DNA of 63,229 nucleotides, the filler included, from Octopus bimaculoides (Eukaryota), in the NCBI RefSeq assembly GCF_001194135.2. It is 5 parts of 5 records of this genome, joined end to end, with 100 filler letters (N's around TTAATTAATTAA, not from the genome) between each part and the next. Parts side by side here need not be neighbours in the genome. Positions count along the whole stretch, not along the records: positions 51,428 to 57,343 come from NC_069009.1; 4 more parts are not named here. One strand, 5' to 3'. The notes beneath the pieces were generated by a model. It ran no database searches, was not told where the DNA came from, and saw only the letters and a program-made list of their open reading frames with translations. The position numbers and the translations under genes are program-made. This document shows, in pieces, positions 51,266 through 57,343 of this stretch; position 1 is the first letter of the stretch, and each line of letters begins with the position of its first letter.

Positions 51266-51437
51266 CATACATATATGTTTATATACATATATGTTTATAT
51301 ACATATATGTTTATATATATATATATANNNNNNNNNNNNNNNNNNNNNNNNNNNNNNNNNNNNNNNNNNNNTTAATTAATTAANNNNNNNNNNNNNNNNN
51401 NNNNNNNNNNNNNNNNNNNNNNNNNNNATATATATCG

Positions 51438-51471
<34 letters not shown>

Positions 51472-51761
51472 GTATATATATGTATATGCATGTAAGTATG
51501 TATGTATTTAAGTATGTATTCAAACAGACGAGTTGGTCATGAGTGGAACAGCTTTAATAATAAGTCTACTTGATTTGATGGATGATATGAAGTGAAAAGT
51601 CACCACCCTCACCACCACCACCACCAAAAGTAGAGTTAATTGCCCTGTTATTTCTAACCTTGTTTTGAGTCACCACATAATTATACGTTGAGTGGCTGTG
51701 ATGGTGGTGATGACGACGGTGGTGTGGCATTGTTGTCGATTCTGTTCGCTATTTTTTATAA

Positions 51762-51960
51762 CCCTAGGTCAGTTTTGACCGAGCTGACCTACAAGTACAC
51801 TCAATGGTTACCCATCGGTGACCACCCCGTCTGAAATTCCCAACTCGATGGTTTCTGCCCCTCTCGAGACCTTTGAGCTGACATTTCAGATGTATGCCCA
51901 ACGATGTTCCAGCCGTGGCCATCCTGTCTTTTATTCAGACATAGTGTATCTAGGACTACA
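51762..51960 (+). repeat. Unclassified short interspersed repeat (family C); related pieces at ~16680-16860 (+), ~28960-29040 (+), ~45045-45125 (-)
   Basis: Shared degenerate block resembling GATCAAAG..RTTCCA.CYRTGRCCATC, usually preceded by AACCCTA.GTC or AGCCCCG.GTCAG. Confidence 0.55.
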
Positions 51961-52622
51961 TTAACTAATTGTTACTAATAGTATAGTTGGAAAGAGTAGT
52001 GGCTGTAGGTGTTGTTTATATACATACATACATACACATACGTAATATATCCATATATATGTATATATATATATATACACACACACACATATACAAACAA
52101 TATATATACATATATACATACATATATGTATANNNNNNNNNNNNNNNNNNNNNNNNNNNNNNNNNNNNNNNNNNNNNNNNNNNNNNNNNNNNNNNNNNNN
52201 NNNNNNNNNNNNNNNNNNNNNNNNNNNNNNNNNNNNNNNNNNNNNNNNNNNNNNNNNNNNNNNNNNNNNNNNNNNNNNNNNNNNNNNNNNNNNNNATATA
52301 TATATATATATATAAATGTATAATAAACTTTATAATAAACTTTAATATAAATGAATTTAGCGTCAAAACTCTTATTTAAATTTGTGATATATAACCAAGG
52401 AGATTGATCCATAAGGAGTCTACTATAGACCATTGTGGACGAATTTTTGCTATTTTGGTAACGACTACGTTTTATCTCACCAAAACATTGTGGAGATATC
52501 ATTATATGAACACCTATATATATATAATGTAGTCATACATATATATAACATATATATATATACGTATTCATACATATATATGGCATACATACGTACATAC
52601 ATGCATGCATACATGCATATAT

Positions 52623-52900
52623 ACCGGGTGCGGCATATACATTTACCCATTATTCAAACAGAAACTGATATACTCTTGTTTGAAAAAGTAATCGCGAATA
52701 TTGTACGAAGCATCCTAAATTCTTCTTGTTTCATTGTCCACCCTTAATTGACTGTGGCGGGTCAAACAAAACACACGAAGAAATTGTTGTATTGAAAATG
52801 GCTGGTGTAAAGAATAATGAAGTGATAAAGCAGTCGAGAAAATATGTTGAACGCAAACGGTGGCCATTTTGAATTGTAAATACATACGTAAAATATTGTC
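52623..52900 (+). mobile_element. Tc1/mariner-superfamily deletion relic
   Basis: TA-CCGGGTG start and a C-terminal ANGGHFEL* motif near 52853-52879. The right TIR is not clearly recognisable. Confidence 0.4.
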
Positions 52901-53474
52901 AATGAATATAACAGTCAATTTGTAAACTTTCGTTTACCAAAGCCTAAAACTTTATAGTTGGGGATGGTCATATTTTTGCCAATTAAAGGCATGCGCTATA
53001 TACTTGGTCTTCGGTTCAACTTCATTATTTTTTTTTATTTTAGCGTCTTTTGTCTAAGCTCTTTGGTCACACATTCTATGAGATACGTGGGATAAAGTGG
53101 GCTTAGAGAAAGGACACTAAAGTAAGAATAATGATAGGGATGAAGTGAAGAACGAGTATACAGTGTGTGTGTTTAGTTGGGGAAAATATGACCATCTCAG
53201 AGTATAACAATATCTGCTTCAGCATACGATTCGACATACGAGGAATCTTGCAAGACAAATATACAAACGTGAAGCTTTTTATTTTATGATAAAATATATA
53301 ATGGGTAAGCATATGTACAGGTGTGTGTGTATCGTGTGTGCGTGAGTTTGTGTGTGTGTGTGCGTGTGTGTGTGCACGCGTACGTTTGTATTTAAGCAGA
53401 TGTATGTCTATGAAAGAACAGCTAGATAGATTGGTGGACGTATGTATTTATACCTGTTCGTGCCTATACATATA

Positions 53475-53687
53475 CAAGGGGGTGCTGAAAAGTTCCTGGC
53501 TTTAAGGGTGTAGCGAAAGACCTGGCTGAAGGCCCAACCTTCCGAGTTCTTTTACAGGGCTTAGAAAAACTGAAGGACTGCTGCAGTAAGTGTGTGAATC
53601 TGAGAGGGGAACATGTTGAGTAAAATCATAACTGATTCACCTGTATTTTCTTTTACCCAAAGCCAGGAACTTTTCAGCACTCCTTCG
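53475..53687 (+). mobile_element. Mariner-derived MITE (internal deletion derivative), 213 bp
   Basis: ~28-bp TIRs CAAGGGGGTGCTGAAAAGTTCCTGGCTTT / AAAGCCAGGAACTTTTCAGCACTCCTTCG with TA on both sides. The interior retains a mariner C-terminus GLEKLKDCCSKCVNLRGEHVE*. Confidence 0.9.
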
Positions 53688-53724
53688 TATGTATAGATAC
53701 ATAGTGTGTTTATGCGTTCATGGT

Positions 53725-56700
53725 TTAAATGAATGGCGCCCATATTGGAGACAGGAAGTCTATAAGCGATTGTATTACGAGAATAATCCTACCTTTTTTC
53801 GTGTTTCCAGCACCCGCTTCACGTTTTAATTGTTCAATACGCGGTACCGTGGTGCAATCAGTCTTTGGCGTGGTTTCGTCGGTCTTACCTCCGACGGCTT
53901 CCACCTCGACCGTGGGTTCGGCGTCGCCGATACGTGTTTCGCATGATGGAGGTGCTGTTTTATGGTCACCAGCGACACGTTTGACGAAATTTCCGGTTGA
54001 CTCCGTCGTGCGTCGCTCACAAAGCGCCTCCATAACGAAGTTGTCTCCTTCACCCATGTAGCTTTTATTTTCATGTTGCTTGACGTGGTCGTCTGCTTCT
54101 TCAGGTCTGGTCCAGTTGCGATGAAATCCAGTTTCCAGAATCGTACAACTCAAGGATTGCATCGACTCGAGTTGACCGTCGCCGATTTTCTCTTCCTTAA
54201 TATCTAAAGCTATAGCCATTTGGAAATCTATGGTTTCATCAGTTTCCAATGAAGAATCTTCACAACGTTGACAATCTGTGTTCGATTCGCCAGTGGTGCT
54301 CGTTTGTGGGGAAAATGTATTTTGTTCAGATGACAGTTTGTTTGTCGACTGCAACTCTCTGTGCATTTCTTCATGCGTTGTGTTGCAGATATCACGAAGA
54401 CTTTCACCACTTTCGTTCCGTTCCTGGTCTTGATTCTTGTCATCGTTCGTGTTGCCACTTAAATCTTCGTCCTGTTTATTCAAAATTTTGAAATCAGGGA
54501 AAGAACGATCAGTATTTTCAGGGATTTCCAAAACGGGGGACATTTCACTGCGATTGAAACGAGACTCAAAAGAATCTACAATGCTTTTCGCCATTTTGTC
54601 TTCTTCAAATTTCCAGTTGAGACCTTTGTCGACAGAATCGACTATGCACAAACTCGTGTTATTTTCTTTTTCAACCTTATTCTCGTCGTTTTTGCAGTTA
54701 TTTTCCAAGATAATTCCTTCGTACTCGCTTGTGTCACTGTTAAAATGTCTTCCTTTTCTCTCCGTTGGTAAAACGACGTTCACGTAGCTTTCAAGGATTT
54801 CTTCGCTTTCAATGTTTATCTCTTCCTCGTTGTAAGTCAACCTCCTCGTATTAGTCTCTTCGCAAAGATTAGCTGCGTATTTTGTGACCGCACACTTATT
54901 TTCTGGTTCCTCTACATACGACTTTGAGCAGTAGAGTTCTTCAGTTAAACTGTCATTCCGCTTCTTGTCTTCCCCGCCATCTTCAATGATGTCACACGTC
55001 ACGTGAGCTACGTCACAATCGGTGAATTCATGGACGGCATCTTCTTCAAATTCGAACGAAGTACTCGGAGTAGCAGTGCCTTCAAAATTCACAGAATTTA
55101 CAGAATGAGATTTAGGAATTTGAGGCCCCGCATTAGATATTGAATCTTTACCCTTCACAAATTCGTCCTTCTCGGAAAACTCAGAGTCTTGCAGATTGCG
55201 TCTATTGAACTCGAAGACGCTTCGATTATTAACAGAATTGTTAATGTTGGGTCCATAAACCGGGTTAACATCTCCTCTCTTTATCGTTTCCAAATCTTCA
55301 ACACCAGTAAATCCTAAAACAACGTATTCGGGCAACTCTTTATCTTCCATCTCGTCTCGCATGAAGTCTTTCTTTGCACATACTGTGGAAATATCAGTAG
55401 TAACATCTTTTGAATCATCGTCTGAATGCTCGCATAGTTTCCCGCCTTTCACCAAATTCGATCTCGTACAGGGGCATCCTTCTGCTGGTTCAATGTTTTC
55501 CTCGATCACTGGATAATCCATATCTTTGTAGCAGATGCTTGTGAACAGCGTGTAGTCGCTGTCTTCCGTTAAATCTGAGTAACTACGATCTTTGTCCGTC
55601 CCATTAACCTCTCCGCTAGCAGAAGCGGCAGATGTATTGCCTGTATAAGAAATGCAACGTTCGACCGAGTAGCCAGTGACTTCGTCATCGTAACGATTAT
55701 TCGAAGTGTCGTTGGCTTCGATACTGCGGCGCGTGTACGTCCCTGTCTGTTGTAAGGGACACAAGTCAGGCTCACCCTCAACAGAACACCGCATATCTAA
55801 AGGGTTAGACAACGCCGCGTTAGTGATATTCTGTCTGGAATAGCCGATCGGTTCGTCGTCACAATGAACTTCGTGGCCTGTACCCTTTCCTTCCGTTCGT
55901 CGTTCTGTGATTCCGTCGCCGTCTCGATTTACAGGATGTTCGTCTCCGTCCGTAGCGTCGCTGCAATCACTGTACATGCTCGCTGCACGTCCTATAACAT
56001 TGGAACCATCGGCATCTCCGCCCCGACGGTGCTCCGCGCCGTCTCCAACGTTTCCTCGGTAGCCGGTCACGTGATGCATGTGATAGCCATTTCCGTTGTC
56101 CCCTCTCTTGCTAGTCATTCCTGCAGCAAAATCTGCAACGTCCGCTTCCGATTCATATCCTGTCACAGCACCGATATTTCCGCTTTTTCTATGCTCAGCA
56201 TTCACATCGTATCCGGTGACGTCTCGACTACTCTCACTTTCGCAACGATCCTTTACTTCCTGTCCGGCGCCGAACCCGGTGGTGATGGCAATTTCATCGG
56301 CCTCTTTTCCGTCGCCATCCAATCGGGAACCTTTGTCGCATGTATAACTCGTGACGTCTAAGAAACCGCTATAACAACTTCCGGTTGGTTCATAATTTCT
56401 CTCTACTCCGCTGGCTCCTTCTTCGAGAGAATGGTACCCGGAAGTTGTGATACTAGTCTGTCTTAGGTACCGGGGTACAACTTTATCACTATCGCTGAAA
56501 CCAACAGTACTATTACCACACGTGACCGAGTCGACGGCCTCGACACAGCTGTCACCACTAGCGCCACCTTGCCGGCAAGTCATGTCAGAAAGGGTAGACA
56601 TTTTGTCTGTCCAGTTTTCATTCATATAACCGAATGTGCAAACATCTCCAGTGCAGACGATGTTTGCGCTGCTGTCCACAGCCTCGTTTTCAACCCTCTG

Positions 56701-57125
56701 CCTCCACCTTTCATCCGAGTACTGTCCATTATCTTCTTCTTCTGGGATATCATCGAGATTGTCACATCCGGCGAATATGTTTTCATATCCAGTATATACA
56801 CTGTCACTTCCGCTGTGATTTTTGCCTTTTTCAGAGTACATGTTACTACTTCCGGAATAGGTGGCGTCAATTTCAGCGAAGATATTTCTTCTGGCATATA
56901 AATTGTCGCTCGCAGACAACATGTTACTTCCTGAATACGCAGAATCACTTCCGAAATTGATAGTGTCCTGTTTAGTGTACATTGCCTCACTTCCAGAATA
57001 CATAACTTCGTTATTTCCGGTGTACATATTTTCAGTTCCGGTATATGATTTGTCATTTCCAATGAACATATTACTTCTTTCATTAGTCGTATCACTTCCG
57101 GGATAAACGGTGTTATCCCCAGACA

Positions 57126-57177
<52 letters not shown>

Positions 57178-57343
57178 TCCGAGGTATAAGTCGTCACTTC
57201 CGGAATATTGGAGGAGACAGCTGCTGCCGTCATTATCGTGGTGGCTGTGCTGATAGTCATTGTCTTGCATGTCATTGGTGTTTTCTTTACACGTGACTTC
57301 GAAGGCAGTTTTAGCTGTGCAGTGAACAGCAGCTTCAGCGCAT
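53725..57343 (-). CDS. Giant coding exon (about 1200 codons) of an unidentified gene; acidic, Ser/Asp/Glu/Asn/Thr-rich, probably disordered; 5' end lost in gap, probable splice donor at 53792
   Basis: 1181-aa stop-free ORF (57270-53725) in non-microsatellite sequence that is GC-richer than its flanks. The same frame stays open 24 codons upstream of the first ATG (CAEAAVHCTAKTAFEVTCKENTND) to the N gap at 57344. Minus-strand AAAAAAG|GTAGGA at 53793/53792 looks like a donor, after which the translation (RIILVIQSLIDFLSPIWAPFI) looks intronic. No recognisable domain. Confidence 0.85.

What the first reader, a model, noticed from the sequence alone, without database searches (positions are those of the whole stretch)
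53725..57343. Giant (over 3.5 kb) low-complexity exon of an unidentified, possibly cephalopod-specific gene
Seen: about 1200 stop-free codons in a window where nothing else exceeds a few hundred real codons. It is open at the 5' gap, ends at a plausible phase-1 donor (53792), and has no transposon motifs. The sequence is acidic and S/T/N-rich with short linear-motif-like islands (RQTSITTSGYHSLEE, IPKSHSVNSV, RSEMSPVLEIPE). Inference: a giant disordered exon like those of neuronal scaffold or cytoskeletal genes, whose conserved exons lie outside the window or in gaps. I could not identify the neighbouring exons.
Basis: partly seen in the sequence, partly recalled or inferred. Interest (0 to 1): 0.7.

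Follow-up and report, generated by a model that had tools for sequence, protein, structure and literature searches.

The report
Large disordered exon, uncharacterized octopus gene
This is a real coding exon of at least 3.5 kb from the Octopus bimaculoides gene LOC106869044, which is annotated but uncharacterized; it encodes an acidic, probably unstructured protein with no detectable relatives, which makes it an ordinary lineage-restricted gene.

Summary
The minus strand carries 1205 stop-free codons (57342 to 53728, stop at 53727-53725), with strong three-base periodicity. Shuffled sequence never exceeds 261 codons. The frame is cut by the piece's edge at 57343.

An exhaustive HMMER search of 1.84 billion representative proteins found one real match. 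It is XP_014770039.1, 'uncharacterized protein LOC106869044' of Octopus bimaculoides, 100% identical over ORF residues 517-1183. It then adds 176 residues from exons outside the piece.

The model starts at Met517. The 516 upstream codons look equally coding, so the model is probably truncated at its 5' end.

The searches found no Pfam domain, no match to solved structures and no other homologue. Composition (pI 4.4, net charge -0.10 per residue) and a single-sequence AlphaFold run (mean pLDDT 29.5) point to disorder. True low complexity is confined to residues 42-195: about 18 degenerate heptads ([YF]-[ST]-G-[STN]-[DEN]) and a run of 17 Asn.

The neuronal-scaffold idea has no support, because the known downstream exons are also domain-free. 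Expression, conservation and copy number could not be tested. Interest is low to moderate.

The parts
53793..57343 (-). Coding exon of O. bimaculoides LOC106869044, at least 3551 nt. It is cut at its 5' end by the piece's edge. In-frame codons run from 57342 down to 53794, plus one extra base (53793) that starts the codon split by the intron.
   Evidence: Stop-free frame and coding statistics. 100% identity to XP_014770039.1 over residues 517-1183 with no gap.
53794..55794 (-). The part of the exon covered by the existing RefSeq model (Met517 at 55794-55792 through Lys1183), 667 codons.
   Evidence: phmmer match of query 517-1183 to P0001 1-667 at 100% identity. The source name is. tblastn of P0001 onto the piece is.
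55795..57342 (-). 516 further in-frame codons upstream of the model's start. They are probably coding sequence missing from the 5'-truncated model. The first in-frame ATG in the piece is at 57270 (residue 25).
   Evidence: No stop codon, and a period-3 signal of 32.8 times background, as strong as in the annotated part. Purine and GC asymmetry by codon position is the same in every 100-codon block.
56758..57219 (-). Asn/Ser/Gly/Tyr-rich array of about 18 degenerate heptads (residues 42-195), with core [YF]-[ST]-G-[STN]-[DEN]-x-[MLIV]. The DNA core is TAY-WCN-GGA-AGT-GAM.
   Evidence: Lag-7 autocorrelation of Y/F and of G: 6 observed against 1.2-1.6 expected, reached in 1-3 of 2000 shuffles. 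Y[ST]G occurs 9 times against 0.6 expected. A 21-nt tandem repeat and direct-repeat family D5 were found. Codon table. N+Q+S+G+Y make up 54% of residues.
57127..57177 (-). Run of 17 Asn codons, (AAT)17, interrupting the heptad array (residues 56-72).
   Evidence: TRF found period 3, 17.3 copies, 100% match. Translation.
56059..56220 (-). Gly/Asp/His-rich segment with three VTGY motifs and a duplicated AEHR[KR] motif (residues 375-428). A fourth VTGY lies at residues 555-558. This is an internal duplication.
   Evidence: VTGY occurs 4 times against 0.02 expected, reached in 0 of 2000 shuffles. AEHR[KR] occurs 2 times against 0 expected.
53786..53796 (-). Splice donor AAG|GTAGGA, phase 1. The exon ends at 53793 and the intron starts at 53792.
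   Evidence: Sequence. The gene model reads ...GNTKK then A-A-D-H..., leaving the genomic frame exactly here.
53725..53792 (-). Read-through of the frame into the intron (..GRIILVIQSLIDFLSPIWAPFI*). It is not part of the protein, so the terminal 22 codons of the 'ORF' are intronic.
   Evidence: The model departs from the genome at the donor.
51428..53792 (-). Downstream intron, at least 2.36 kb, holding microsatellites, an assembly gap (52133-52295) and a MITE-like element. The next exon is not in the piece.
   Evidence: tblastn of the 176-residue tail found no match in the piece. Repeats. No period-3 signal.

Best explanation
The region is the large coding exon of the Octopus bimaculoides gene LOC106869044 ('uncharacterized protein'). 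The exon is at least 3551 nt long. It runs beyond the piece's 5' edge and ends at the phase-1 donor at 53793|53792. Together with 176 residues from downstream exons outside the piece, it encodes a protein of at least 1335-1359 residues.

The existing RefSeq model starts at Met517 and is most likely truncated at its 5' end.

The product is acidic (pI about 4.4), has no recognisable domain and is probably intrinsically disordered along its whole length. It has no detectable relatives, so it is a lineage-restricted, fast-evolving gene.

The mechanism is inferred, not shown. The N-terminal Asn/Ser/Gly/Tyr-rich heptad array, with an aromatic residue about every seventh position and a 17-Asn run, has the make-up of a 'prion-like' low-complexity domain. 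It would mediate weak multivalent self-association (condensate or gel formation). The long acidic remainder would act as a solvated, probably phosphorylatable spacer (46 S/T-x-x-D/E sites) carrying short recurrent motifs such as VTGY.

Confidence by step: identity of the exon and gene about 0.95; upstream 516 codons coding and part of the same exon about 0.8; disorder about 0.7; self-association mechanism about 0.25. The overall figure of 0.6 weights identity and anatomy most heavily.
For: Stop-free frame, codon asymmetry and periodicity. Exhaustive phmmer search: 100% identity over residues 517-1183 to P0001, which is XP_014770039.1 LOC106869044 of O. bimaculoides. The model leaves the genome exactly at the donor. 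No Pfam family, no match to solved-structure sequences, and no other homologue. Charge-hydropathy places the exon, both of its halves and the tail on the disordered side (mean hydropathy 0.395 against a boundary of 0.45). Net charge per residue is -0.10, and no 19-residue window exceeds Kyte-Doolittle 0.68. AlphaFold2 single-sequence gave mean pLDDT 29.5 with 1182 of 1183 residues below 50. Within the heptads, the S/T position uses TCC, TCT, TCA, AGC, ACC and ACT while the residue class is kept, a weak sign of selection at the protein level.
Against: No expression data and no orthologue could be examined, so translation and purifying selection are inferred from sequence statistics alone. The only independent support is a computational Gnomon model, and it starts at Met517, not upstream. 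That model was found only through EukProt, not through an NCBI source, so its current RefSeq status is unknown. Single-sequence AlphaFold is expected to give low confidence even for folded orphan proteins. Cys is 3.1% (37 residues), high for an intracellular disordered protein. In the heptads, Gly is always GGA and the following Ser always AGT, so the array may simply reflect recent DNA slippage rather than a selected motif. The mechanism rests on analogy of composition only.
Confidence: 0.6

Rival explanations
1. It encodes a secreted acidic matrix, adhesive or mucus-type protein, for example for statolith, beak, sucker or egg-case material. Acidic Ser/Thr/Asn/Gly-rich disordered chains with scattered cysteines would bind cations or cross-link outside the cell, and the Tyr-Gly-Ser heptads would serve as cross-linking or adhesive motifs.
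For: pI 4.4, D+E 19%, 37 Cys (3.1%) and 18 N-x-S/T sequons. Tyr/Gly/Ser repeats. Lineage-restricted repetitive acidic proteins are typical of mollusc extracellular matrices (own knowledge).
Against: No signal peptide or hydrophobic segment is visible in the available sequence; the highest 19-residue hydropathy is 0.68. If Met25 (57270) is the start, the N-terminus (MQDNDYQHSHH...) is not a signal peptide. The sequon count is what the composition predicts (about 17 expected, my arithmetic). Asp content is far below that of classical shell-matrix acidic proteins. The true N-terminus is unknown.
Confidence: 0.15
2. This is the first reader's view: a giant disordered insert exon in a conserved neuronal scaffold or cytoskeletal gene, comparable to the giant exons of ankyrins, MAP1B or Bassoon/Piccolo, with the conserved, domain-bearing exons lying outside the piece.
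For: The frame is open at the 5' edge, so upstream exons may exist. Multi-kb single exons encoding disordered polypeptide are known in such genes (own knowledge).
Against: The downstream exons are known from the gene model and carry no domain or homologue. The Gnomon model was not joined to any conserved upstream domain. The exon itself has no similarity to any protein outside this species. No tissue data are available.
Confidence: 0.1
3. It is not a functional host gene. It would be an ORF belonging to an uncharacterised repeat or transposon, or a young, neutrally drifting or pseudogenising ORF that a gene predictor turned into a model.
For: No homologue, no domain, and only a computational model. 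The surrounding intron holds transposon remnants. Copy number could not be checked.
Against: A frame of 1205 codons with strong period-3 signal across all 100-codon blocks is not expected of decaying sequence. A canonical donor splices it to further coding exons in the model. There is no transposase, reverse transcriptase, integrase or capsid signature, and no terminal repeats flank the ORF.
Confidence: 0.07

Closest known systems
XP_014770039.1, 'PREDICTED: uncharacterized protein LOC106869044' (Octopus bimaculoides; EukProt EP00106_P002597)
   Same: Identical over ORF residues 517-1183, uses the same donor, and is the same gene.
   Different: The model starts at Met517 and lacks the 516 or more upstream in-frame codons, including the heptad array and poly-Asn run. 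It is a computational prediction with no assigned function.
Prion-like / FUS-type low-complexity domains (aromatic 'stickers' in polar Gly/Ser/Asn/Gln 'spacers')
   Same: Residues 42-195 are 54% N+Q+S+G+Y, with Tyr/Phe spaced about every 7 residues, a poly-Asn run and few charges (16%). It may work in the same way, as a multivalent self-association module.
   Different: There is no sequence homology and no RNA-binding or other folded domain attached. It contains Met, Asp and Glu in every repeat and is followed by more than 1100 acidic residues. The behaviour is untested.
RNA polymerase II CTD heptads (YSPTSPS)
   Same: Both are tandem heptads beginning Tyr-Ser/Thr with further Ser/Thr, in a disordered tail-like region.
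   Different: This array has no prolines and a Gly at position 3. It is very degenerate, is not part of an RPB1-like protein, and no homology was detected. The resemblance is superficial.
Giant disordered exons of neuronal cytoskeletal or scaffold genes (giant ankyrin-G/B exon, MAP1B, Bassoon/Piccolo)
   Same: A single multi-kb exon encodes a domain-free, probably extended polypeptide.
   Different: Those exons sit within genes that have conserved folded domains and recognisable orthologues. Here, neither the exon nor the known downstream exons show any domain or orthologue.
TNN65988.1, hypothetical protein EYF80_023744 (Liparis tanakae, a fish)
   Same: It has about 18 tandem heptads (E-D-I-H-T-G-T) that align with residues 90-203 (E 1.2e-5 against the library; 26% identity).
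   Different: Similarity is confined to the repeat, comes from a distant phylum and an unverified model, and nothing outside the repeat matches. This is best read as convergence of a simple repeat, not homology. Its weak match to a grass antifreeze beta-roll family is below the Pfam cut-off.

Membership tests
Exon of O. bimaculoides LOC106869044 (XP_014770039.1) | Near-identical, ungapped match of the genomic translation to the model protein | tested here: met
   100% identity, query 517-1183 to model 1-667, one stretch. tblastn gave 99.85% over 668 residues; the only difference is the residue after the splice.
Exon of O. bimaculoides LOC106869044 (XP_014770039.1) | The model leaves the genomic frame at a canonical splice donor | tested here: met
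   ...GNTKK|AADH in the model against AAG|GTAGGA at 53793|53792 in the genome, phase 1.
Exon of O. bimaculoides LOC106869044 (XP_014770039.1) | Transcription and splicing shown by RNA evidence | not testable with these tools
   No octopus RNA-seq or genome collection is available. No paper mentions the locus.
Any curated protein domain family (Pfam-A) | Score at or above a family's gathering threshold | tested here: not met
   0 families for the 1205-residue ORF. For P0001 only DUF3206 at 13.6 bits against a cut-off of 23.7.
Transposable-element ORF | Transposase, reverse transcriptase, integrase or gag-type domain in the ORF | tested here: not met
   No Pfam hit and no homologue among 1.84 billion representatives.
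Transposable-element ORF | Multiple dispersed copies in the genome | not testable with these tools
   No cephalopod genome is searchable. Within the piece there is no second copy.
Giant-exon neuronal scaffold or cytoskeletal genes (ankyrin, MAP1, Bassoon/Piccolo type) | Conserved folded domains encoded by flanking exons of the same gene | tested here: not met
   The downstream 176 residues have no domain or homologue. Upstream exons are unknown, so the test covers the 3' side only.
Giant-exon neuronal scaffold or cytoskeletal genes (ankyrin, MAP1, Bassoon/Piccolo type) | Neuron-specific inclusion or expression | not testable with these tools
   No expression data.
Prion-like low-complexity domain (functional class, not a homology family) | A stretch of 60 or more residues dominated by N/Q/S/G/Y, poor in charged and aliphatic residues, with regularly spaced aromatics | tested here: inconclusive
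   Residues 42-195 are 54% N+Q+S+G+Y and 16% charged, with Y/F periodicity of 7. No dedicated predictor (PLAAC) and no experiment were available, and the acidic residues in each repeat are atypical.
Taxonomically restricted (cephalopod- or octopod-specific) gene | Orthologues present in related cephalopods and absent outside them | tested here: inconclusive
   Absence outside is supported. Presence in other cephalopods could not be examined, and it is unclear whether the libraries hold other cephalopod proteomes. The word-index searches even missed the self-hit.

The most novel reading that the evidence does not exclude
The gene encodes an octopod- or cephalopod-restricted condensate- or gel-forming protein of more than 1300 residues. 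Its Tyr-Ser/Thr-Gly heptad array would be a new kind of self-assembly repeat, with a possible convergent counterpart in a fish heptad protein. The current annotation would be hiding this module because the model is truncated at its 5' end.
Probability: 0.1. Interest if true: 0.5.

Novelty: new member of a known kind. Interest (0 to 1): 0.25.

Why it matters
The practical value is modest. The existing gene model for LOC106869044 probably misses at least 1.5 kb of coding sequence, including its only clearly repetitive module. The gene also adds to the large set of lineage-restricted, disordered octopus proteins whose roles are unknown. If expression turned out to be tissue-specific (sucker, skin, nervous system or reproductive tissue) and the heptad array did drive self-assembly, it would be a tractable example of a young disordered gene contributing to a cephalopod novelty. 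Nothing found here makes that more than a possibility.

Tried and rejected
1. Word-index homology search with the whole ORF found nothing. The exhaustive search replaced it.

2. Word-index searches with P0001 and with its 176-residue tail returned only the self-hit or nothing. The tail search also failed to return P0001, so these negatives are weak.

3. Exact-sequence look-ups for encoding contigs found nothing on record, both for the ORF from ATG 57270 and for P0001. No flanking genome could therefore be fetched.

4. The JGI metagenome scan for relatives of residues 517-1183 gave 58 pattern matches, none confirmed.

5. The PDB sequence search gave only two chance matches to the Asn-rich part (E about 0.6).

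6. Rfam on the whole piece gave nothing.

7. The literature search for the locus or accession gave nothing. The octopus genome paper is not held.

8. The fish heptad protein P0002 was considered as a homologue and rejected as repeat convergence.

9. The downstream exons were sought in the piece and not found.

10. A mariner identity for the intronic elements was tested with Pfam and not supported. It remains a resemblance from memory.

11. A fold search was not run, because no part of the model reached usable confidence.
Full report
**Observation**

On the minus strand, the frame beginning at 57342 is open for 1205 codons and closes at TAA 53727-53725. Beyond 57343 there is only N, so the piece's edge cuts the frame at its 5' end.

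This is far beyond chance:
- The per-codon stop probability from base composition is 0.061, giving about 1e-33 for 1205 open codons.
- In 200 shuffles the longest open frame on either strand averaged 125 codons, with a maximum of 261.
- The other five frames hold 25-140 stops.

The frame also has the statistics of translated sequence. Codon position 1 is 71% purine and position 2 is 40% A. The same asymmetry appears in every block of 100 codons. The period-3 Fourier signal is 32.8 times background for codons 1-516 and 22.7 times for codons 517-1183, against 0.4 for the neighbouring intron.

**Identity**

Pfam gave nothing.

An exhaustive phmmer search of 1.84 billion representative proteins returned two hits.
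- P0001 (843 aa) is 100% identical to ORF residues 517-1183 in a single ungapped stretch. Its source name is XP_014770039.1, 'PREDICTED: uncharacterized protein LOC106869044 [Octopus bimaculoides]', held through EukProt.
- P0002 is a hypothetical protein of the fish Liparis tanakae. It consists largely of E-D-I-H-T-G-T heptads and aligns only with the heptad region here. I treat it as convergence of a simple repeat.

**Exon boundaries**

P0001 reads ...EAGAGNTKK and then AADHEDSDQ.... The genome reads ...AAA AAG|GTAGGATT at that point. The last 22 codons of the open frame (53792-53728) are intronic read-through.

The remaining 176 residues of P0001 are not encoded anywhere in the piece. The 2.36 kb from 53792 down to 51428 is therefore intron.

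The model starts at Met517 (55794). The nearest upstream in-frame Met is residue 456 (55977), so the model's transcript must begin between those two points.

The 516 codons upstream are stop-free and at least as periodic as the annotated part. The simplest reading is that the model is truncated at its 5' end and that the exon is at least 3551 nt long.

Whether the exon continues beyond 57343 cannot be decided. The start codon could be the ATG at 57270 (residue 25). The 24 open codons before it have about a 0.23 chance of being open by accident (my arithmetic). From Met25 the protein would have 1335 residues.

**What the product looks like**

- Charge-hydropathy analysis puts the exon, both of its halves and the 176-residue tail on the disordered side. 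The values are pI 4.4, net charge per residue -0.10, GRAVY -0.95 and no hydrophobic segment.
- A single-sequence AlphaFold2 run gave mean pLDDT 29.5 with no segment at or above 50. This is consistent with disorder, though single-sequence runs are weak evidence.
- No sequence of a solved structure matches.
- 'Low complexity' applies only locally. Mean 30-residue entropy is 3.5 bits and 3% of windows fall below 3.0.

The real repeat is at residues 42-195. It holds about 18 degenerate heptads with core [YF]-[ST]-G-[STN]-[DEN]-x-[MLIV], interrupted by 17 Asn encoded as (AAT)17.
- Lag-7 autocorrelation of Tyr/Phe and of Gly is reached in only 1-3 of 2000 shuffles.
- Y[ST]G occurs 9 times against 0.6 expected.
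- Gly is always GGA and the following Ser always AGT, so the array grew by DNA duplication. The Ser/Thr position uses six different codons.
- This segment is 54% N+Q+S+G+Y.

Further on, VTGY occurs four times (0.02 expected) and AEHR[KR] twice, which marks an internal duplication at residues 375-440.

**Relatives**

Apart from the self-hit, nothing was found:
- the exhaustive search with residues 1-1183;
- the word-index searches with P0001 and with the tail;
- the metagenome scan;
- Pfam on P0001.

Two caveats limit the claim of 'cephalopod-specific'. First, the word-index searches twice failed to return a protein that contains the query exactly. Second, I could not establish that the libraries hold other cephalopod proteomes. 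P0001 is listed only from EukProt, so its present RefSeq status is unknown. Exact-sequence look-ups for genomic context failed, and no paper mentions the locus.

**Interpretation**

What is shown: this is a real, very large coding exon of an annotated but uncharacterized octopus gene. It has a verified 3' splice donor, a probable unannotated 5' extension, no domain and no detectable homologue.

What is inferred: the product is an acidic intrinsically disordered protein.

My preferred mechanism, at low confidence (about 0.25), has two parts. The N-terminal Asn/Ser/Gly/Tyr heptad array acts like a prion-like low-complexity domain, with aromatic stickers in polar spacers giving weak multivalent self-association. 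The long acidic remainder is a solvated spacer with phosphorylatable sites (46 S/T-x-x-D/E, 11 R-x-x-S/T) and short motifs.

Rivals:
- A secreted acidic matrix or adhesive protein. The 3.1% Cys and the acidity favour it. The lack of any hydrophobic leader in the available sequence, and a sequon count no higher than expected, argue against it.
There is no support, because the known downstream exons have no domain.
- A repeat-derived or non-functional ORF. The coding statistics, the splicing and the lack of transposon domains argue against it, but copy number is untested.

For context, published comparisons of octopod genomes report many lineage-specific and octopod-specific genes, with expression of novel genes noted in neural tissue and octopod-age genes highest in male reproductive tissue (PMC7656900). 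A gene of this kind is therefore not unusual for these genomes.

**Verdict**

The feature is ordinary in kind: a lineage-restricted disordered protein gene that already exists as a predicted locus. One useful correction emerges (a probable 5'-truncated model) and one mildly interesting module (the Tyr-Ser/Thr-Gly heptads). Interest is 0.25.

Noticed in passing
window 53467-53695 (intron, about 100 nt downstream of the donor): A MITE-like element of about 229 bp. It has 37-nt terminal inverted repeats (86% complementary) and TA on both flanks. On the + strand its inner part translates to ...FRVLLQGLEKLKDCCSKCVNLRGEHVE*, which resembles the C-terminus of a mariner transposase (from memory only). 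Pfam gave no support.
   Followed up: partly
window 52650-52960, minus strand: A short reading-frame fragment (..MKQEEFRMLRTIFAITF..) that loosely recalls the N-terminus of a mariner-type transposase. There is no Pfam support, only a sub-threshold PAP_assoc match at E 0.013. It may be another decayed transposon remnant in the intron.
   Followed up: partly
window 56622-57275, minus strand, alternative frame: A second open frame of 217 codons overlaps the heptad and poly-Asn region in another frame on the same strand (poly-Ile from the AAT run). In codons 1-200 that frame has no stops at all. It is most likely a by-product of the repeated 21-nt DNA unit, not a second product.
   Followed up: partly
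window 52133-52295 and flanks 52017-52132, 52296-52351, 52515-52624, 51438-51519: A 163-N assembly gap lies inside (TA)n / (ATAC)n / (TATG)n microsatellites. Similar AT-rich microsatellites recur through the intron and form many spurious inverted repeats.
   Followed up: no
window 53321-53381: A (GT)n/(CA)n microsatellite of about 27 units in the intron.
   Followed up: no
window 51601-51740, minus strand: Trinucleotide runs: (GGT)n, and (CAC)n giving a short His-rich ORF (MPHHRRHHHHHHSH...). This is probably just a microsatellite.
   Followed up: no
P0002 (TNN65988.1, Liparis tanakae): A fish hypothetical protein made of about 18 E-D-I-H-T-G-T heptads, similar in pattern to the octopus heptads. 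It has a sub-threshold match to the grass antifreeze beta-roll family PF21300 (E 1e-4, 22.7 bits against a cut-off of 30). Whether such Thr-Gly heptads form a beta-solenoid is open.
   Followed up: partly
tools: The word-index protein search did not return P0001 when queried with sequences that P0001 contains exactly: the whole ORF, and the 176-residue tail. Its negative results for compositionally biased queries should not be relied on.
   Followed up: yes
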